NCBI GenBank assembly: GCA_000708835.1
Contig: DF236955.1
Span: forward strand, 1 to 64,000
Length of the DNA stretch: 64,000 nucleotides
DNA from: Klebsormidium nitens
Taxonomy: Eukaryota > Plantae > Klebsormidiophyceae
Direction: 5' to 3'
Below the pieces are notes generated by a model. It was given only the letters and a program-made list of their open reading frames with translations, made no database searches and was not told the DNA's origin. The translations under genes were made by a program, and so were the position numbers. Positions 52,804 to 63,524 of this stretch are shown here, piece by piece (positions within the stretch are counted from its first letter, which is position 1; every line of letters starts with the position of its first letter).

Positions 52804-55800
52804 TCATTGCGTCGGCTGGAGGCCTCCTTGCTCCACGTCACCTGCCTCTTCCCGATTCACCACCTCCTTCTTTCTACCTTCTCTACTTTTCTCGCCTTTC
52901 TTCTCCCTCAACTCCTCGATCCTCGCGCCCGACTTCTTGGGGGATCCCTTGTACTCCAATTGGAGAAGCAACGAGTTGGCCATGACGCCGAGTGAGCTCA
53001 CGCCCATGAGCGCCCCAGAGATGGATGGCGTCAGCATGAGGCCGGCGCTCGGGAAAAACACCCCGGCCGCGAGAGGGATCCCCACCATGTTGTACGCGAA
53101 CGCCCACCAAAGATTCTGCCGAATCTTGTTGAACGTCGCGCGGCTCAGCTCGAGGGCGTCCAGGACCTGCGGGTCAATGCAAAGCTTTACCCCCCCAGGA
53201 ACCATATACCGTTCAGTGTCCGCGTCATTGGCCGTTGCTAATCTGCCTCATTGTTCAAATCTGCGTGTTTCGGAGAACAACTCTGAAAGTATCACTGACG
53301 AATCTTCTGTGCCGCACCGCCGAGCTGCTAAACGTCTTTTCCTGCTGTACGAATCATAGGCCGAATGAATGTGCTCGAGCAAGATGAGTATCACATCTTT
53401 CCCTGTGTTAAAGGACGTGAGATTCCAGCGAGTCTGAATTTGGGCGACCACAGGAGCGCGTACCTGCGGCAAGCGGTCGCCCATGAGCACGATGGACGAG
53501 ACCTCGCTCGCGGCCCCGACGCCGCCCGCCATCGCAATGCCCACGTTCGCAGTCGCGAGCGCGGCCGCGTCGTTGACGCCATCCCCGACCATGGCGACTT
53601 TCCGCCCGTCCTTTTGCCACTGCTGCACCAGCGCGGCCTTCTGGGCGGGGCGCACCTCTCCATAAGCCTGAAGGAGAGCAGTTTAGGTTTTATACTTGAA
53701 ATAAAAAACGCGTTGTGCTTTTAGGTGACGCCGTTCTTTCCCGGTGTCGCCGTTAAATCCGTCCTCTTGCCACTGCTGCACCAGCGGGGCCTCCTGGGGG
53801 GGGTGCATTTCTACAAGGAATCTGGCTTCTATCCAAAGTTTGCACTCAATGGTCTTAAGGTCACGCCAATCCTTGCCAATCAATCTCTAATTTTCAGGCT
53901 CTATGCCTCCGCCGCAACCATGCCTTGGGCGACGGCGGCTCTCCGGCGGTATCCGTGCTAGAGCCAAGCATTCATGCCCCCAAAACAGGTCTAGTCGTTT
54001 GAAGTAGAGGGTAAGGATCGGTGAACGGCCGTCTTCTAGAATCCGTTTTGAAAGGGAAGAGACGATTAAAGCGAGGATTGGATGATTTTTACTTGCTATT
54101 ACGGGACTGGCAAGTCCCACCCTCTTGAGACATCTGAAGACGCAACCGGCGTTAATCTCTTCCAAACCGAGCGTAGTATTAGAACAGGAAAAATGACGGA
54201 CTAGCCTGTGGAAGGCCTTCTGAATCTGTCATATTCTGGCACCTTGCCGGCTCTGATCAGTCTTTAACACCTCCCTCCAAATGCAAAAGGTACGCAGTAA
54301 AGCCCCACCTGCTGCGGATCGATGCCCACTTTTGCCGCGACCGCCTCCGCCGCCGCCTGCTTATCGCCCGAGATCATTGCCGTGCGCAACCCCAGTTTCC
54401 TTAACCCTTCCACTGTTCCCGCCGCGTCCGGTCGAACCTCGTCCTCCATCGCGACAGCGCCCGCGACTCGCCCGTCAATGCTGACGTAAACCACGGTCTG
54501 ACCCTGCTTCGCAAGGTCCGGGAGGCGGCCCAAACCCGCGGGGTTTGGGGGTTTGGCGCCGGCCGACGCGGCCTCTGGCGTGCTCGCCGTTTCGTCGTCG
54601 GTAGCCGTTTGTGATCCGAGGATTTTAGAATCTGAAGGTGTTTGCTTGTCAAACGATCTGGGGTTTGAAGGGGTCCGAGGGATTATAGGGGTCTGGGAGG
54701 TGGAAGTTTCGACGTCGGATGGGGTCTGGGGTTTCACGGAGGCTGAGCCGTTCGACGCCCGGCGCTCGACCCAGTCGAGAGAACCCACGGCAATTCGCCG
54801 GCCGTCAATCGTGGCAGAAGCGCCGCTGCCGGGCTCTTGCTCGAACGTGCCGTCTTGAATGCGGGGGATGACGTGGCCGCGCGAGGAGGCGGCCTGGACG
54901 ACCGCCTTGGCCAGGGGGTGGGAGCTCGCCTGCTCGACGCCTGGAGCGGGATTTGAAGACTGGTTAGAGGACTGTGGTTAAAAGAACGTTTACTTAACCG
55001 TGGTTGGAAGCCGGTCAGACAAGTGTGGTCTCAAGACCTTACTAGGAAAGACTTAGCCATGCAGAGGAAGGAAAAATATAGGGACCGGTCAGATATATGT
55101 ACTCCAAAAACACGAACTGGCCAAGGGCATGCAACGCCAGCGATCCTTGCGTGGAAAGAGGCGGGTTAGGATATCCAATTCAAGATCAATGCAGATGCGA
55201 TGGATTTGGCAGTTGAGCAATACAAGTGACAACTGTGAATCACGTAGTCTAACGCGAGGCTTGTCTCTTTCCGCAAAGGAGTCACATTTCTGCCGTTTTA
55301 AAGCACGGCAAATTCTGTAGGACGGACGCTCGAGAAGAAAACGCAGCGGAGACGAGTGTATCTCCAGAGAATATGATGGAAAACGAGAAGAATCGAGCGA
55401 ATCAAAAGAGACCAAGCCCCGACCAACGAGCTGCTGACAGCGCGACAGGAGGTATGAGATAATTGGCATCCTTGAAGTGCCTTCGCCCATGGACCGTCGA
55501 ACAGTTCTCACGGATCGAGAAACGAGCAGAGAAGCCTCGCAACTTTCGAAGATGACCTCACCTGCCGCCAGCGCCAGCACTTCGTCTTCGCTCCACCCAC
55601 TTTCCCCTCCCCCCCCGACCACTTTCGTCACCACGGGCCGCCCCGCCGTAAGCGTCCCCGTCTTATCAAACACGACCGTGTCCAGCTCCCACACCTTCTC
55701 CAATACGTCGCCCCCCCGTATCAACAACCCCTTGCGCGCCCCGAGGGAGGTGCCAACTAAAACGGCGGTCGGGGTCGCTAAACCGAGCGCACACGGGCAC

Positions 55801-58800
55801 GCCACGACCAAAACGTTGCAAGCCATTTGGAGCGCTAGAAGAAGGGGACCGCCCGGGGGAATCAACCGGGGAAACAGCTGCGGGCCCGCGAGGCGCCAGA
55901 AGGCGAAGGTGGCTGCTGACGTGGCCATGACGCCGTAGCAGAACTTGCCGGAGACGGCGTCGGCGAGGCGCTGGACTGGGGCCTCCCTGTGAAAGATAAA
56001 GGTGCTGCGTAAGCGGGCAACGGGAGGCATTAAGGTTAGGCAACAGGCAGAGGAGTGCGCGAATCTTCACAAAAAGCGGGCTGCAAAGTTGATGGATGCC
56101 GTTTCGGAGCTTCACAATCACTGTCGTCTGATGCCCCCTCTTGTGCGGAGCAGAGAAACTAAGATGCTCTGGGATGTTTCGGGAAGAAGTTTCCGGGTTG
56201 TGGACGCGATCCTGAGCTGTTAGTGACGCTGGCTGAGACTCGGAACCATTGAACATGCGGAACAGATTATGCGTTTTGAGAATCGGCGGCCTTGAATGCG
56301 GCGGAGTTGGCGGCTTTCGAAATCCTCCGCTTGTTACATTTCTACGAGCAGCTCCGTTCTCGTTCGAGTGAGCCGACAGAAATTCTCTTTTCCTTCCCGT
56401 CGTGACAATGGTCACCTCTTGGCAACCTACCAAGTCCTGTCCATTGAACCGCCTCAAGGCCCTTCCACAAGCCCTTATCCAGACCCTCTTACCCCACAAC
56501 ATTCCAACCCCGAACCAAAGCATACCAAACCCAAAATTCCTCCTAATCCTTAAACGCTTCTCAACCCGTTGTCTCACCCGCCTCCAGAATCCCTAGAGCA
56601 CGGTCCAAAACCTAAATCTGAATCTAAACTCCTCAAACCCGGTTCTGAGCGTCTTAACCCACCTGGTTTGCGCGTCCTCCACCATGCGCACAATGTCCCC
56701 CAGCACCGTGTCCCCCCCACCCCGCCGCGCCGCAACGCGCAGCGTCCCGTTGTAGTTCATGGTCCCCGCGGTGACGTCATCCCCCGCCTGCTTGAGCACC
56801 GGCAGCGGCTCTCCCGTCAGGCTCGATTCGTCAACCGTCGTGCGGCCCGACTCGACGGTGCCATCCACCGGGATGCGGTCCTAGAAGCAGAAGACAAATC
56901 TCAAAATAATGTAAGCAGAGCATGAACTGGCGTCAATTTCTCATGCATTGAAAGCGGCTCCCCCGTCAACTCGATTCGTCCACGGTCATGCGGCCCGACT
57001 CGACCCTCCTTCACAGGGACGCACCTTGCCGCCCAGTGATGCTAAGGCGTTTACCTGACGAGGACAGCAACCCTATAAGGTTCAATTTCCATGAAGAAGC
57101 GTCCTAAACCATCCTCACGTACCTAGCATCATAATTTACCTTTGTTTCATCACTTCCAAGCCATCTCAACATCCTATCGTTAACTATGTCGCTCCCCATT
57201 GCTTCCGCTGCGTGACAGCTTCTTCCACCAACGGCTTCTTCCACCAACGGCCTGCAAGGTCGAACCGAACCAAACCACTAAAATATTCGAACAGCTCTCC
57301 CGGCGACCTCACCCCAGGATACACCAGCACGGTGTCGCCCTGCCCCAGCGCGTCCGTTGGCACCTCCACCGTCTTCTCCTTGCCGTCTTTCCCAGTCACC
57401 AGCAGGCGCGCTTTGGGCGGCAGCAGATTCAGGAGCGCGGTCATGTCGCTGGTCGCCTGCAGCTTGGCGCGCTCCTCTACCGCGCGCCCGAGGAGGACGA
57501 AGGCCAGCAGCATTACCGGCTCCTCGAAGAACGTCTGCCACTTCTGCAGGGGCAATGTGGAGAAGTCCTTGATCAGCGTTCGGAACGGCCACGGCTGATG
57601 TACCTTCGAAGTACTGGACTACGGGTTTTTCAACACAGGCTTCGGTTTCTTGGAGAGGACTCTCGAGTAAAAAGGACAGCTCTCGTATCCTTTTCTTTCT
57701 TGATTCTTTCTTCCTTTTTCCAGTCAAGTGGTCAAAGGCGGATGCTTGTCAAGGAACCACTATTTGCTGAGTCCAGGGCAGCTTAGATTCGTCAAAGAGG
57801 CCACATAATGAAGGTAGTCTTTCCAGAGCCAATCGTTTCATATCCTGGCAGCAAGACGATCTGCAACAGCGACTAGGTACCAACCTTCCAGATTAAATCT
57901 ACACCTACGAAGCAATCTCCGTGGCAACCGAGAGGATAAATAACCACTCTCCTGTCAACAGGAGATGAGGCAGACAAGTCCGCTCCTTTTGAAAGCACCG
58001 AGCACTGGCGACAGCAAAACGACCAGACAAGCCAGACACGTGATCAACCACTACCGAAATTGGGTTGGGAATAAATGGAGCACATCTGAGCAGCAATGAG
58101 CGTGCACCTGAAGCACATCTGAGCAGCAATGAGCGTGCCCCTGAGCATACCGAAATCAACAGCAACAAAAGCAAACGGCAACATCAGGCAATCGGAGGCT
58201 GGATTCAGAAAGGGAACGCTCATCAATCTCACTGCCAGCAGCAGTGAGATTGATGAGCACCGACGATCACGGACAAAACGGCAAACGCAAGATGGGCGTT
58301 ACGACGTCACACATAGCTCCACTGTACCCACAAATTCTACAAACATGTAGCTGAAGAACGGAAAATACGGACGGAAAAGAAGGAACAGAACGGATCCCCT
58401 CACCAGCTGCGGCAGCAGCGCGGCCGCCGAGCTGACGGCGAACGACGACAGCGCGCCGAGCGCCACCAGCGTGTTCATGTTGGGGGCATTCCGCTTGAGG
58501 GAGCCGATTCCGTCCACGAGCAGCTTCCGCCCGGGGCCCGCCAGCGCGATCACAGAGAGCGCCACGTGGAACTGCGTGGAGTGCAGGAAGCCCAGCCAGG
58601 GGGGGAGGTGCGCGTGCAGAAAGTGCGCGGCGTGGCCGGCGACGCAGGCGGCGGCGAGGCTCCACGCGACGGCGAGGCGTTGCCCTGACGGGAAGTTTGA
58701 GTTTGAGGTTAGCAGAGGTTGAGCTTTGTCGGTATTGTGGTTCGGGTTAATGAGGTTGAGGTTGAGGTGAAGGGAGGTTGAGGTTCAACAAGATTGAAGT

Positions 58801-61800
58801 CAAACGAGGTTGAGTTTGAATGAGGTTGAGAAAAACCGAGATCGACGTTAAACGAGGTTGAGGTTAAACGAGACTGATGTTGAACGAGACTGAGGTCAAA
58901 CGAGGTTGCAATCAAACGAGATTGAGGGGAACACGATTGAGGAGCTTGAACGAGGTTAGGGTTAAAACGAGATTGGCATTAAGCGGGTTGAGGTGGGTCA
59001 TCTGGTTACTGGCAGTAAAGCGGATGGAGGCCCCATGCCACAGCGAGGTGTTAACCTGAAGAGATTTCTTCGCTGTCAGGTCAAAGTCCAATCACATTAA
59101 GATTCAGTCGGGTCGAGATAGACCAATCCGTAGGGAAATCAGTTGTAGAGCGAACGGTTACGTATGGGTATTTCATCGATCACTGAGAGACGAGTGAGCT
59201 TTGTTTAGCGGCTTGGGGTACTTAACGTGCAGGGAGTCAACTTGGCTATTGACCCTTGGCCCACTGAAGGCATCTCAAAATGGCTCGCTTCAGTGAAAGG
59301 ATCGGAAAGAGAGCGGAAAACGGGACCTAAGAGTGCCTCCAGGATCTTGACAAGATATCCCTTAGTAGGATGGGCAGACTTGATGTTCAATGGGTCCCAT
59401 GTCAATTGTGAAGCCATCGTAGCTGGCTCTCTTCGGAGCTTAGCAATTTGCGGCCCGGTGTTCGAATTTTACAATCACGAGCCCGAGTCCGCTCAACGGT
59501 CGCACTTTTTTGTCCGCTTGGATTCAAAGATACGGAGAATTTGTTGCAGGACGATCCAAGCGGGAAAAAGCAGGAGAAGAAAATTGGCCAGGCACAGGAG
59601 ATGAAGCTTTAGGCGACGACTTACCGCTATCTTTGAGCCTTTGCAACCTCTCTTCTCGCTTTCGGTGGGCGGAGGGGCTCGAACCTCCCGTCTTGGAATC
59701 TGCAAGATGACATAGAATCAAATTGGAGATACTGTTTTGAGTCGAATCGCTCCCGCTTCCGAGGCTTTGAGGAGCATGCTAATCTCGCGAACTCCTGCAG
59801 ACGATGTGGTGGGATCCAAGATCCAGTCAAGCATCTTCAGGTTTGCGCAGACGTAGACTTTGTTCAGAAAAGTGCGCAGACGGAAACATTGTTCATAAGG
59901 GTAAGCAGTCCAAAATGCTTCAAATGCCGTGAAAAGCGGCTCGTATAACAAAGTACAGTGAAACTTGTGAATTAAAACAGCAGAGTGCGAACATGCCGTT
60001 GCAACTGTCTTCAAAGTTACGATCAGGAACCAGAATGTCAGCAGAGCACATTTGACTGTCGGGTCAGCAAACCGGATGTCAGCAACATTGATGATAGATA
60101 CGACATGAATCATTAGTGAATACAGTTCCAGCAGCCTTGCAAAATCATCAAATCCTCTCTTAGTACAATACACAATCCCCTGTTTGATGTCTTCTCTAGC
60201 TACTGTTATGCTGAATCCAAATGCAACCTTATAAACTAATCAAAAGCAGGCACACTCCAGCTACCCCTGGAACCTTCGTTTGTGCACATCTGCACCTTTC
60301 CTACTCCTCAGACTTTCTTCTCTTCCACCTAAAACCTTTGCTAGTCCGGTAACACATTGAGACTGATCTTGCAACAAAGTCTCGCAACTAGCTACTCTCT
60401 TCCGAACGACTGCAACCCCCTTCCGTCAGGCCTTCTTAACTGCACACAGAACATAACTGACATAAGCTGACGTGGTCTGTGTGAGCGTCAGGCCTGACGA
60501 AGGGGGGCCGGTAAACGACACTTTGATCACCTCCCCCGAGAGAAAACTTCCCCGAACCAACTGGGGTGCATCGAAGACTGCTAACTTTGCCAACTTTTGG
60601 TTGTCGAGGTTTGTTATCTAAAAACCGTTTGCTTCTCTTGTCAGAAAATTTTCTGTGACAGGTAGGGCGATGCAGGATTTGCCCATATGCAGCTCAGAGT
60701 CAATCAAACGCCGAAGAGCCCCCGACGCCCCAGCCTGAGAAAAAAGATTAGCGGATACGGTCCAAACGAAGCGAAAGGAGAACCACACGCGAAAACAGAC
60801 CAGTAACATGGCCAAAAGGATGTTCTTACCTCGCAGTGTTGATTTGAAGCCGGCTTTCGTAAGCTGGGCTGCTAGTTGTTCAGCTACTTTTTCCTTCTTG
60901 CCGTCGCTTTCAGCAGACGGCTCCAGTTGGATCAGAGCAGTCTCGGTGGCGAGATTGACCGTGGCGGAACTGACTTCCGGCTAAGGGAAAACAAACGTTC
61001 GGAATAAGGTGTGTAAGCAGATTGTAATGGACGAGCTGGAGGTGACAATCTTGGGCTGCTTGCATCCAGGCATAATCATTTTCGCATACACAGGTCAACA
61101 ATGATTAACGGCTAGTTTTTGAGAACATTAGCCTGATGCGAAAACTATAACAGAACGTGGATAGCCCTCGAACGTATCGTGGCGGTCGAAAAAAGTAATG
61201 ATCAACCGTTTACGATTGAAAAAGTCGCTACAAGGGGAGTGCACAAATCACTGGCTAACATGATTTGACAGGATGTTCCCAAACCAAGCAGGTTTACCCC
61301 ATATGCACAGATAGGTTGAAAGGCAAGACCGCTGGCTTTAAGGGCACAAGATGCCTATGGAGGCGCTTGATTTCAGGGGCTGAGAACTGATGGGCCCGTT
61401 ATCAGTTCTCAGCGACATGGCGCCCTTAAGAAAAAGCATTCATTCAATTTCGTCCTCTGAAAGACAACTTTTGATCGCAAAAGTCCACCGGAAAACCTGT
61501 GAAATCTCGACGAAACAGATAGCAGTTGTTGCCCATCACCAATAGCAGTCGTTGCCTTTGCGATGCTCCAAGGATTATGAGACAAGTGCCCCATTTAGAT
61601 TGTCTAAACTAAATCTAAATCGTAACGAGTGACAAGCAGTGGAGAAAGGGCCTAGGTACGTACCTGTGATTCGAGAATCCGTTTGACAGCCGATGCGCAG
61701 CCCCCGCAAGACATGCCCTGCATGCGCACCAAATTCAATCATTTCAGGGGAATGCGCGTAGCAGAATGGCATATTTGGCCGGATTGAAAAACTGGACGAT

Positions 61801-63524
61801 CTGAGTATCTTTCTCAATCTAATGATGAGAAAATCAAGATTACAAAGATGATGCCAGGTATCACCTTCATGAGACCAGATGCTGACTATTCGGAGACTTA
61901 CACCTGAATAGTCTGTCTATCAAGCAGGTAATAAGCGGGTATCTGAGCTGAAAGGATAGAATCATGGGTTTCCGATTGAATACAGGCTTTAATTCAGCTG
62001 CGGTGTCCTGAGCGGAGCTCACTCAACTATGAACGCAGGCTGTGCAAACAGCGTCGCCTCGAAAGTGTCTTACAGCAGCCAGAAGTCTCTCATTCCCAAA
62101 ACAGACTCAATCGAGTCAATGTTACCGCCTAAAGTGTAACCCACGTCCATCTGTTTTGCATTCAGCTTACAGAGTAGAGCCCCTGAAAAGGTTTGTGCAG
62201 CCCACACCAAGACACCCCTCTGTGACATGAACGTAATCTGCCTGAGCTTTCACCCCCAACAAGTCCTCCAGGTGCGTTGTCCGGGAACAACCTCAAAAAC
62301 CAGAACAACTATAAGCGTGCCAAGTCTTTCCTGGAAGGGCACACAGCATCGGGAACTGGACCCGAGATTCAAAGCCGTCGAAGCCAAAACGTTCAGCGAC
62401 ATTGATAGAGTTGAAGCCCCTACTTTATACCAACGCTTGACCAGAAACATGGCTCCTTGCCCCCCATTGGAGTAACTGTGGGGAACACAAGCGGTCTTCA
62501 AGGGGGAAGCTCACCCCAACATCAAGGACAACAACTTCATCTGACCGGTCGTCTCCTTTCTCACTCGCCACCCCCTCCACGTCCACCACCGCGTGGCCCC
62601 CCCCCCNNNNNNNNNNNNNNNNNNNNNNNNNNNNNNNNNNNNNNNNNNNNNNNNNNNNNNNNNNNNNNNNNNNNNNNNNNNNNNNNNNNNNNNNNNNNNN
62701 NNNNNNNNNNNNNNNNNNNNNNNNNNNNNNNNNNNNNNNNNNNNNNNNNNNNNNNNNNNNNNNNNNNNNNNNNNNNNNNNNNNNNNNNNNNNNNNNNNNN
62801 NNNNNNNNNNNNNNNNNNNNNNNNNNNNNNNNNNNNNNNNNNNNNNNNNNNNNNNNNNNNNNNNNNNNNNNNNNNNNNNNNNNNNNNNNNNNNNNNNNNN
62901 NNNNNNNNNNNNNNNNNNNNNNNNNNNNNNNNNNNNNNNNNNNNNNNNNNNNNNNNNNNNNNNNNNNNNNNNNNNNNNNNNNNNNNNNNNNNNNNNNNNN
63001 NNNNNNNNNNNNNNNNNNNNNNNNNNNNNNNNNNNNNNNNNNNNNNNNNNNNNNNNNNNNNNNNNNNNNNNNNNNNNNNNNNNNNNNNNNNNNNNNNNNN
63101 NGCTAGCAAATCCTGCCGACCCCCCCGCAGCAACTTGAGATGCCTTCAATAGAAGTGCCAATTTCCCCTGTGTTTGAGTGTCCCGGGGAAGCATCCACAT
63201 GACGGTTTGCAGGAGCCTCTGGCGCCGCTGACACGGGCACGCCGCGTTGCTGACGTCAGCGTAGCGCTGCGCCCCCCTCCTGGGTGACGTTCGCCTCGTA
63301 GGAGGGTCCATCCTTCTGGAAGGAGAGAGGAGACTGGGGCGAGGTGACAGCGAGGCGTGATGTGGCGCCCCGGTGTGAATTGGCGCCCTGGCGTGAATTG
63401 GCAGCCTAACGTTGTGCGGTATAGTCATGAGCGCGTGTCCGTCGCGCAACAAACTGCCACCAGCCCCAACTGCAGAAACTTCTCTCAAGGGGACCACCGA
63501 GCATACGGTCACCGCAGACGACAT
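52804..63524 (-). CDS. PAA1: Chloroplast envelope P1B Cu(I)-ATPase PAA1/HMA6; exons 63524-62515 (spans gap), 61717-61664, 60980-60830, 59699-59625, 58684-58404, 57543-57313, 56880-56663, 55986-55562, 54940-54309, 53667-53464, 53166-52804
   Basis: DEVVVLDVG|GMSCGGCASAVKRILESQ|PEVSSATVNLATETA (PAA1-type HMA), PNMNTLV, FFEEPVML, TGE, VVACPCALGLATP, DKTGT, SHP, GDGVND, QNLWWAFAYN; transit-peptide-like N-terminus. Confidence 0.95.
53575..53812 (-). repeat. Intronic degenerate copy of the 5' part of PAA1 exon 10 (period 153)
   Basis: ttgccactgctgcaccagcg at 53614 and 53767; echo translates EMHPPQEAPLVQQWQEDG vs exon EVRPAQKAALVQQWQKDG. Confidence 0.9.
56805..57006 (-). repeat. Intronic degenerate copy of the 5' part of PAA1 exon 7 (period 148-149)
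   Basis: gcggctctcccgtcaggctcgattcgtcaaccgtcgtgcggcccgactcgac (56805) vs gcggctcccccgtcaactcgattcgtccacggtcatgcggcccgactcgac (56954). Confidence 0.9.
58079..58147. repeat. 33-bp tandem duplication in PAA1 intron 5
   Basis: agcacatctgagcagcaatgagcgtgc(a/c)cctga repeated twice. Confidence 0.9.
58700..58970. repeat. Low-complexity degenerate tandem tract (gaggttgag / aaacgag units) upstream of PAA1 exon 5 acceptor
   Basis: Direct reading. Confidence 0.75.
62607..63101. other. Assembly gap (495 N) inside PAA1 exon 1
   Basis: N run flanked by a poly-C run; coding frames on the two sides are not joined by the N count. Confidence 0.98.

What the first reader, a model, noticed from the sequence alone, without database searches (positions are those of the whole stretch)
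60700..60830. Cryptic acceptor in PAA1 intron 3 predicts a PCH1-like soluble copper chaperone isoform
Right after the exon completing the HMA domain, the GTAAG donor (60829) is followed 95 nt later by a textbook 3' site: CTAAT branch point, CTTTTTTCT tract, CAG (AG at 60736-60735). Splicing there gives ...GFKSTLRG-WGVGGSSAFD-stop (TGA 60702-60700), i.e. transit peptide plus GMSCGGC domain only. In land plants the chaperone PCH1 arises by alternative splicing of PAA1. An equivalent here would extend that one-gene transporter-plus-chaperone system back to streptophyte algae, possibly by an independent splice route.
Basis: partly seen in the sequence, partly recalled or inferred. Interest (0 to 1): 0.75.

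Follow-up and report, generated by a model that had tools for sequence, protein, structure and literature searches.

The report
Conserved hairpin exon in algal PAA1

Summary
The window is Klebsormidium nitens scaffold DF236955.1. Its minus strand carries one PAA1/HMA6-type Cu-ATPase gene of 11 exons (63524-52804). GenBank splits this gene into a 111-aa HMA-only model and an 819-aa ATPase model.

They are no more than chance gives.
- Sixteen to 28 decoy AGs score as well in this gene's 7.1 kb of intron.
- In the closest relative the AG is TG and the TGA is CGA.

Intron 3 does hold one island (about 60510-60399) that is 82-85% identical overall across Klebsormidium lineages, and identical between the two closest. 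Four-fold sites are 61-78% identical and the rest of the intron is barely alignable.
- The island carries an acceptor (AG 60441-60440), an in-phase tail V-K-K-A and TGA (60428-60426). All are kept in all four lineages.
- This is the terminal exon of the GenBank 111-aa model.
- The island folds into a hairpin of about 99 nt (-56 kcal/mol, z -5) that pairs the acceptor and the stop codon.

So a PCH1-like isoform is plausible, by a different acceptor than proposed. I found no RNA evidence. PCH1 made by alternative splicing is already reported for Arabidopsis and Chlamydomonas.

The parts
62515..63524 (-). PAA1 exon 1: start Met, transit-peptide-like N-terminus, a poly-Gly stretch hidden by the assembly gap 63101-62607, and the start of the HMA domain (...EVVVLDVG)
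   Evidence: reading frame; donor GTGAGC at 62514; the orthologous exon 1 in L002 is complete and has GGGGNSGYGTGGGGEGGGGGGGGEGG at the place of the gap.
61664..61717 (-). Exon 2: GMSCGGCASAVKRILESQ, the MxCxxC copper site of the HMA domain
60830..60980 (-). Exon 3: the rest of the HMA domain, ending ...GFKSTLR plus one base (phase 1)
   Evidence: The same intron position and phase occur in the distant loci L004 and L007.
59700..60829 (-). Intron 3 (1130 nt), the longest intron of the gene
   Evidence: The exon bookkeeping sums exactly to the 819-aa GenBank model.
60700..60751 (-).
   Evidence: Present. AG, branch motif and stop are all lost in L013. The matrix score is ordinary for decoys.
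60412..60510 (-). Conserved hairpin of about 99 nt. The outer stem pairs 60510-60490 with 60433-60413. The inner stem pairs 60486-60465 with 60458-60439.
60440..60452 (-). Conserved alternative 3' splice site GTTCTGTGTGCAG (AG 60441-60440), base-paired with 60486-60472
   Evidence: Identical from CTGTGTGCAG onward in K. nitens, L013, L002 and L014. Predicted P(unpaired) of A and G is 0.07 and 0.003 in the isolated hairpin.
60426..60439 (-). Alternative coding end: (G)TT AAG AAG GCC TGA, giving V-K-K-A-stop. This is the terminal CDS of the GenBank 111-aa model. The stop codon pairs with 60497-60495.
   Evidence: The only substitution among the four lineages is GTT to GTG, which is synonymous.
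52804..59699 (-). Exons 4-11: the P1B Cu-ATPase body (CPC, DKTGT, YN and MxxSS motifs)
   Evidence: motifs in frames. (TIGR01511/TIGR01525 hits collinear along the exons). (splice sites).

Best explanation
This is one PAA1/HMA6-type chloroplast copper pump gene, which GenBank wrongly splits in two. After exon 3, which completes the copper-binding HMA domain, the donor at 60829 has two partners. The distal acceptor at 59700 gives the full transporter. A conserved proximal acceptor at 60441-60440 adds four codons (V-K-K-A) and a stop. That product carries only the transit peptide, the poly-Gly stretch and the HMA domain, about 277 aa by analogy with the complete L002 exon 1. It would be a PCH1-like soluble copper chaperone. 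The proximal acceptor, its pyrimidine/UG tract and the stop codon are locked in a conserved hairpin of about 35 bp. I infer that this hairpin limits or regulates how often the short form is made. Shown here: the conservation, the phase, the fold and the match to the public gene model. Inferred: that the acceptor is used, that the short protein accumulates, and that the hairpin controls the choice.
For: (1) Identity of the locus. The window is K. nitens GCA_000708835.1 DF236955.1, with a 111-aa HMA model at 63311-60426 and an 819-aa ATPase model at 60051-52804 on the same strand. The 111-aa protein ends ...GFKSTLR-VKKA.

(2) Conservation of the island.
- Against L002, blastn aligns only the exons plus one intronic island, 60506-60399 (81.6%, E 1e-22).
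- Against L013, the island is the only non-exon block at 80% identity or more in 9 kb.
- The 60-nt window holding the acceptor is 90% identical, against 32-56% for the introns and 83-93% for the exons.
- The island as a whole is 85% and 82% identical, against four-fold-site identity of 78% and 61%.
- L014 and L002 differ by 15-19% throughout, yet are identical over the roughly 100-nt hairpin.

(3) Phase and tail. In all four lineages exon 3 ends in phase 1. The AG lies 390-581 nt downstream of the donor and the tail reads VKKA-stop.

(4) Fold.
- MFE is -56.3 kcal/mol (z -5.2) in K. nitens and -58.8 (z -4.1) in L002.
- It is the most stable 100-nt window of intron 3: -54 against a mean of -20.5, sd 6.9.
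- The consensus of 34-35 pairs is 95% paired.
- The AG and the stop codon are paired.
- The sense strand is 2-9 kcal/mol more stable than the antisense strand in all three lineages tested.

(5) Two independent lines, the Augustus model of Hori et al. and cross-species conservation, pick the same one of 78 AGs in intron 3.

(6) Precedent. PCH1 is made from PAA1 by alternative splicing in Arabidopsis (PMC4709454, PMC4622755) and from CTP2 in Chlamydomonas (PMC10669542).
Against: There is no RNA evidence. Three word-index protein searches found no transcript-derived K. nitens protein for this gene. The GenBank model may be an ab initio Augustus split: its partner model starts with a non-conserved 31-nt exon, and the paper says only that transcripts were mapped and genes were predicted with Augustus. 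By my small matrix the island acceptor is weak (-2.4 bits, rank 19 of 78), and it is predicted to be base-paired. Covariation is not significant: two double changes, and 125 of 500 shuffles do as well. Structure and sequence constraint therefore cannot be separated. The coding part is only 14 nt, so its phase conservation is not independent of the overall near-identity. A long, clean hairpin is equally what a plant miRNA precursor looks like.
Confidence: 0.5

Rival explanations
1. The island is a structured non-coding RNA, for example an intronic miRNA precursor processed by DCL1, or a structural aid to splicing of the long intron. In that case the AG plus VKKA-stop is coincidental and the 111-aa GenBank model is an annotation artefact.
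For: The element is a clean hairpin of about 99 nt with about 35 pairs and few bulges, z -4 to -5. -MFE per 100 nt divided by %GC is about 0.96, in the range usually quoted for plant miRNA precursors (my knowledge). One arm is more conserved than the other and the apical loop carries a 5-nt indel. K. nitens has DCL1-type machinery (PMC7994812). The island acceptor is weak by my matrix. I estimate roughly a 0.1-0.2 chance that a random conserved hairpin holds a YAG followed by an in-phase stop within 5 codons.
Against: Rfam gives no match at E up to 1. There is no second copy in the 64-kb window or in the related loci. The element sits exactly in the intron where a PCH1-type truncation is expected. 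The perfectly conserved run on the 3' arm is 32 nt with one variable site, longer than a miRNA needs. An independent gene model uses this very AG.
Confidence: 0.25
2. The acceptor is used, but the exon acts as a poison exon. Including it (for example 60439 to about 60021) puts a premature stop into a long transcript that is degraded, so it down-tunes PAA1 instead of making a stable chaperone.
For: The two tiny CDS pieces of the GenBank models (14 nt ending at 60426; 31 nt at 60051-60021 with donor GTAACT) are what Augustus would produce if a cDNA contained a single 419-nt exon between exons 3 and 4. Identity between K. nitens and L013 drops from about 0.55-0.6 to about 0.37 near 60050.
Against: The donor at 60020 and the ATG at 60051 are not kept in L013. 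No conserved good donor follows the island. In Arabidopsis the PCH1 mRNA is described as the smaller and more abundant form (PMC4622755).
Confidence: 0.15
3. One reading: the acceptor at 60736-60735 is a functional, selected route to a chaperone ending GWGVGGSSAFD.
For: The motif is a good-looking acceptor (86% pyrimidines at -16 to -3, CAG|G, CTAAT 12 nt upstream of the AG; 3.5-4.1 bits).
Against: AG, branch motif and stop codon are all absent at the aligned site in L013. The window 60769-60710 is 62% identical, which is ordinary for this intron. There are many equally good decoys. The 95-nt mini-intron would be three times shorter than any intron of this gene.
Confidence: 0.03
4. The annotation is right: there are two separate genes, a stand-alone HMA chaperone gene and a downstream ATPase gene without an HMA domain.
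For: The GenBank models themselves.
Against: Exon 4 continues exon 3 in phase. The same exon 3 to exon 4 arrangement occurs in the distant streptophyte loci L004 and L007. The 819-aa model would lack a transit peptide and a metal-binding domain, and its first exon is not conserved.
Confidence: 0.05

Closest known systems
Arabidopsis PCH1, the short splice form of PAA1/HMA6 (Blaby-Haas et al. 2014, as described in PMC4709454 and PMC4622755)
   Same: One gene gives both the copper pump and a protein made only of the transit peptide plus the N-terminal MxCxxC HMA domain. The truncation comes from an early stop reached by alternative splicing just after the HMA-coding part.
   Different: Here nothing is shown at the RNA or protein level. 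The alternative exon is a lineage-specific 14-nt coding end inside a conserved hairpin. I could not read the primary paper (not held), so I could not compare the exact Arabidopsis splice event.
Chlamydomonas PCH1 from alternative splicing of CTP2 (PMC10669542, citing Blaby-Haas 2014)
   Same: It is an algal case of the same transporter-plus-chaperone gene, which means Klebsormidium is phylogenetically bracketed.
   Different: No sequence of that event was available for comparison. The Klebsormidium island is not found in the more distant streptophyte loci L004-L008.
Structured, regulated alternative exons in plants: the TPP riboswitch in THIC and the P5SM exon of TFIIIA (from my own knowledge)
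   Same: A conserved RNA structure overlaps an alternative splice site and a premature stop inside a gene whose output it could tune.
   Different: There is no Rfam match. The element is a simple long hairpin, not a multi-helix ligand pocket. No ligand or protein partner is known.
Plant miRNA precursor hairpins
   Same: Length, stem quality, a variable apical loop and unequal conservation of the two arms.
   Different: No small-RNA data. A single copy. It overlaps an in-phase acceptor and stop at a functionally meaningful place.

Membership tests
PAA1/HMA6-type P1B-1 Cu+-ATPase | N-terminal HMA domain with MxCxxC | tested here: met
   GMSCGGC in exon 2. PF00403 on P0001. CopZ/CopA N-domain hits.
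PAA1/HMA6-type P1B-1 Cu+-ATPase | P1B ATPase core with CPC, DKTGT, and the YN and MxxSS transmembrane signatures | tested here: met
   Motifs read in the exon frames. TIGR01511 and TIGR01525 hits are collinear over exons 6-11. Each exon scores below the whole-protein cut-off because the pieces were searched separately.
PAA1/HMA6-type P1B-1 Cu+-ATPase | Poly-glycine stretch ahead of the HMA domain (named as the PAA1 trait in PMC4709454) | tested here: met
   Present in the orthologous exon 1 of L002. In K. nitens it falls in the assembly gap, whose edges read GGG.
PAA1/HMA6-type P1B-1 Cu+-ATPase | Orthology to PAA1 rather than PAA2/HMA8 by phylogeny | not tested
PCH1 plastid copper chaperone | Product consists of the PAA1 transit peptide plus the HMA domain only | tested here: met
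   The conceptual product of exons 1-3 plus the conserved VKKA-stop exon. The public model P0001 shows it.
PCH1 plastid copper chaperone | Arises from an alternatively spliced PAA1 mRNA (or a duplicate gene) that actually exists | not testable with these tools
   No K. nitens transcript-derived proteins were found. Only conservation of the acceptor, phase and stop speaks for it.
PCH1 plastid copper chaperone | Delivers Cu+ to PAA1 | not testable with these tools
   This is a biochemical assay.
Plant miRNA precursor | Single hairpin with a duplex of about 21 nt and few mismatches | tested here: met
   Outer stem of 8 + 12 pairs with one 1x1 mismatch.
Plant miRNA precursor | Small RNAs mapping as a precise miRNA/miRNA* duplex | not testable with these tools
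   No sRNA data.
Known riboswitch or other Rfam family | Match to a curated covariance model | tested here: not met
   cmscan of 59600-60900, both strands, E up to 1: no match. No tRNA either.

The most novel reading that the evidence does not exclude
The conserved hairpin is a genuine RNA switch. By opening or closing in response to a signal (copper status, temperature, or a binding protein or helicase), it would expose or hide the proximal acceptor. That would set the ratio of copper pump to its own chaperone from a single gene. It would be a new class of structured regulatory exon in metal homeostasis, so far seen only in Klebsormidium.
Probability: 0.15. Interest if true: 0.75.

Novelty: new member of a known kind. 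Interest (0 to 1): 0.45.

Why it matters
If the conserved exon is used, an early-branching streptophyte alga makes a copper pump and that pump's dedicated chaperone from one gene, as reported for Arabidopsis and Chlamydomonas. It would do so through its own lineage-specific exon. The hairpin around the splice site gives a concrete, mutable handle for asking how the pump-to-chaperone ratio is set. The result also corrects the public annotation: two GenBank models are really one PAA1 gene, and its N-terminus is truncated by an assembly gap.

Tried and rejected
2. Transcript evidence: three word-index searches found only genomic ORFs and the GenBank model. They used the exon 3 read-through ORF, exon 3 alone, and exon 1 with the length range set to catch a protein of about 277 aa.
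3. The primary PCH1 paper (PMC4273408 / doi 10.1073/pnas.1421545111) and the review PMC7484467 are not held. The supplements of the genome paper are not held. I therefore could not learn whether the Augustus model had cDNA hints, nor compare the Arabidopsis and Chlamydomonas splice events.
4. Rfam and tRNA scans of intron 3: nothing.
5. A covariance model of the hairpin found only the orthologous copies. There was none elsewhere in the window or in L004-L008.
6. Deeper conservation: intron 3 of the distant streptophyte loci L004 and L007 has no conserved island and no strong hairpin (best -30 kcal/mol).
7. Covariation test: not significant with three near-identical sequences.
8. A cassette exon with a conserved donor: no good conserved donor was found.
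9. A repeat or MITE origin: single copy locally, and more conserved than four-fold sites.

Full report
**Where we are.**
The window equals the first 64 kb of Klebsormidium nitens scaffold DF236955.1 (assembly GCA_000708835.1); window and record coordinates coincide. The minus strand from 63524 to 52804 carries a P1B copper ATPase gene.
- Exon 1 has a transit-peptide-like N-terminus, an assembly gap (63101-62607) and the start of an HMA domain.
- Exon 2 (61717-61664) encodes GMSCGGCASAVKRILESQ.
- Exon 3 (60980-60830) finishes the HMA domain and ends in phase 1.
- Exons 4-11 encode the pump, with CPC, DKTGT, YN and MxxSS motifs.
- NCBIfam copper and heavy-metal ATPase profiles hit the exon frames collinearly.
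- In a related contig (L002) exon 1 is complete and shows a long poly-Gly stretch at the place of the K. nitens gap. PMC4709454 names this stretch as the mark of PAA1.
- I fixed ten introns (297-1130 nt) from three-species alignments.
- With the 31-nt first exon of the public model, exons 4-11 sum to 2460 nt, exactly the 819 aa plus stop of the GenBank ATPase model.

**The observation.**
- donor GTAAG at 60829;
- CTAAT at 60751-60747;
- a T-rich tract;
- CAG with AG at 60736-60735;
- the tail G-WGVGGSSAFD;
- TGA at 60702-60700.

**Is it more than chance?** No.
- A weight matrix from the gene's ten acceptors gives the site 3.5-4.1 bits. That is inside the real range (leave-one-out -3.8 to 5.3), but it is only rank 4 of 78 AGs in intron 3.
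- Of the 383 non-acceptor AGs in the gene's 7.1 kb of introns, 16-28 score 3-4 bits or more.
- Thirty-five percent of all AGs in intron 3 would give a tail of 11 residues or fewer.
- The matrix rests on ten sites and is weak, so I use it only to show that such sites are common.
- The implied 95-nt intron would be a third of the shortest intron in this gene.

**Relatives.**
Word-index protein searches with exon 3 brought in the following.
- The GenBank 111-aa protein P0001.
- Genomic ORFs from related algae in a JGI metagenome: L002, identical to L003 over their shared 11 kb, with 61% identity to K. nitens at four-fold sites.
- A genomic ORF from a Logan assembly: L013, 78% at four-fold sites.
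- Through a 90% cluster, a fourth lineage: L014 (and L015, from the sister sample), 81-85% identical to L002 including introns.
- Two more distant streptophyte groups with about 50% identity in exon 3: L004-L006 and L007-L012.

In L013 the flanks align well, but three things differ. The CAG is CTG, the CTAAT is interrupted by a 5-nt insertion, and GAT TGA is GAT CGA. In L002 this stretch cannot be aligned.

**A different element is conserved.**
- Against L002, blastn aligns the exons and a single intronic island, 60506-60399 (81.6%, E 1e-22).
- Against L013, the only non-exon block at 80% identity or more in 9 kb is 60495-60417.
- The 60-nt window holding the acceptor is 90% identical, against 32-56% for the introns and 83-93% for the exons.
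- The island as a whole is 85% identical to L013 and 82% to L002, above the four-fold-site identities of 78% and 61%.
- L014 and L002 are identical over the roughly 100-nt hairpin, although they differ by 15-19% elsewhere.
- The island contains CTGTGTGCAG followed by T[T/G]AAGAAGGCCTGA.
- With the phase-1 G of exon 3 this reads V-K-K-A-stop in all four lineages. The AG lies 390, 400, 511 and 581 nt from the donor.
- The single substitution is a synonymous GTT to GTG.
- This is exactly the end of the GenBank 111-aa model (...GFKSTLRVKKA; CDS end 60426).

**Structure.**
- The island folds into one long hairpin: K. nitens -56.3 kcal/mol (z -5.2) and L002 -58.8 (z -4.1).
- It is the outlier of intron 3: -54 against a mean of -20.5, sd 6.9.
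- It is more stable than any 100-nt window in a 20-nt-step scan of the gene. Those windows did not frame the hairpin, and their best value was -51.9.
- The consensus has 34-35 pairs, 95% of them formed.
- The inner stem pairs the UG/pyrimidine tract and the AG (60452-60439) with 60486-60472.
- The outer stem pairs 60433-60413, including the stop codon, with the C-rich 60510-60490.
- A CU[G/U]AU branch-like motif sits at the apex, about 23 nt before the AG (read from the sequence).
- The sense strand is 2-9 kcal/mol more stable than the antisense strand in each lineage.
- Covariation is thin: two double changes and three G-U shifts. The shuffle control is not significant at 125/500. The case for structure therefore rests on stability plus conservation of an upstream arm that has no other obvious role.
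- Rfam, tRNA and a purpose-built covariance model find no known family and no second copy.

**Reading.**
The most economical account is that intron 3 holds a conserved alternative 3' exon. That exon ends the reading frame four codons after the HMA domain, giving a PCH1-like protein.
- Secondary literature says this is how PCH1 is made in Arabidopsis (PMC4709454, PMC4622755) and from CTP2 in Chlamydomonas (PMC10669542).
- The hairpin would hold the proximal acceptor in check.
- Two independent pointers land on the same one of 78 AGs: the Augustus-based public model (transcripts were mapped with SPALN, genes predicted with Augustus; PMC4052687) and cross-species conservation.

Set against this:
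- I have no RNA evidence. Three searches found no transcript-derived K. nitens protein.
- The acceptor is weak by my matrix.
- The element looks equally like a plant miRNA precursor, and K. nitens has DCL1-type genes (PMC7994812).
- A poison-exon role is also open. The two tiny CDS ends of the public models would fit a single 419-nt exon (60439-60021), but its donor and the ATG at 60051 are not kept in L013.

**Reach.**
- The intron position and phase after ...STLR are shared with the distant loci L004 and L007.
- Their intron 3 has neither the island nor a strong hairpin.
- The exon is therefore Klebsormidium-specific as far as these data go.

**What I left out.**
I worked exon by exon by reference and used the public protein P0001.
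- I did not run the large representative search.
- The primary PCH1 paper and the genome paper's supplements were not available.

**Verdict.**
- The finding is a likely new member of the known PAA1/PCH1 arrangement, with an unexplained conserved hairpin that deserves an RNA-level test.

Noticed in passing
window 62607-63101 (gap) and 63311: The assembly gap lies inside PAA1 exon 1, where the relative L002 encodes a long poly-Gly stretch. The GenBank 111-aa model bridges the gap with a GT..AG 'intron' and starts at an internal Met (MDPPTRR). The real start is probably the conserved MSSAVTV at 63524.
   Followed up: partly
window 60021-60051: The GenBank 819-aa ATPase model starts with a 31-nt exon (ATG at 60051, donor GTAACT at 60020) inside intron 3. 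Neither the ATG nor the donor is kept in L013, so the two GenBank models are best read as one gene split in two.
   Followed up: yes
window 56953-57004 (intron 6); L013 6310-6403 and 6476-6587: There is a partial copy of the start of exon 7, the A-domain region around the TGE motif (..IELTGEPLSMHEK against SSLTGEPLPVLKQ). It sits in the upstream intron, and L013 has more copies. This may be a decayed exon duplication or alternative exons.
   Followed up: no
window 60770-60829: The first 60 nt of intron 3 are 80% identical between K. nitens and L013, well above the intron average. Identity stays at about 0.55-0.6 down to about 60050 and then drops to about 0.37.
   Followed up: partly
L004-L006 and L007-L012: These are unidentified streptophyte (land-plant-like) PAA1 loci from JGI and ENA metagenomes. 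They share the exon 3 / intron 3 boundary and phase. Read-through of their intron 3 would add only 9-16 residues before a stop.
   Followed up: partly
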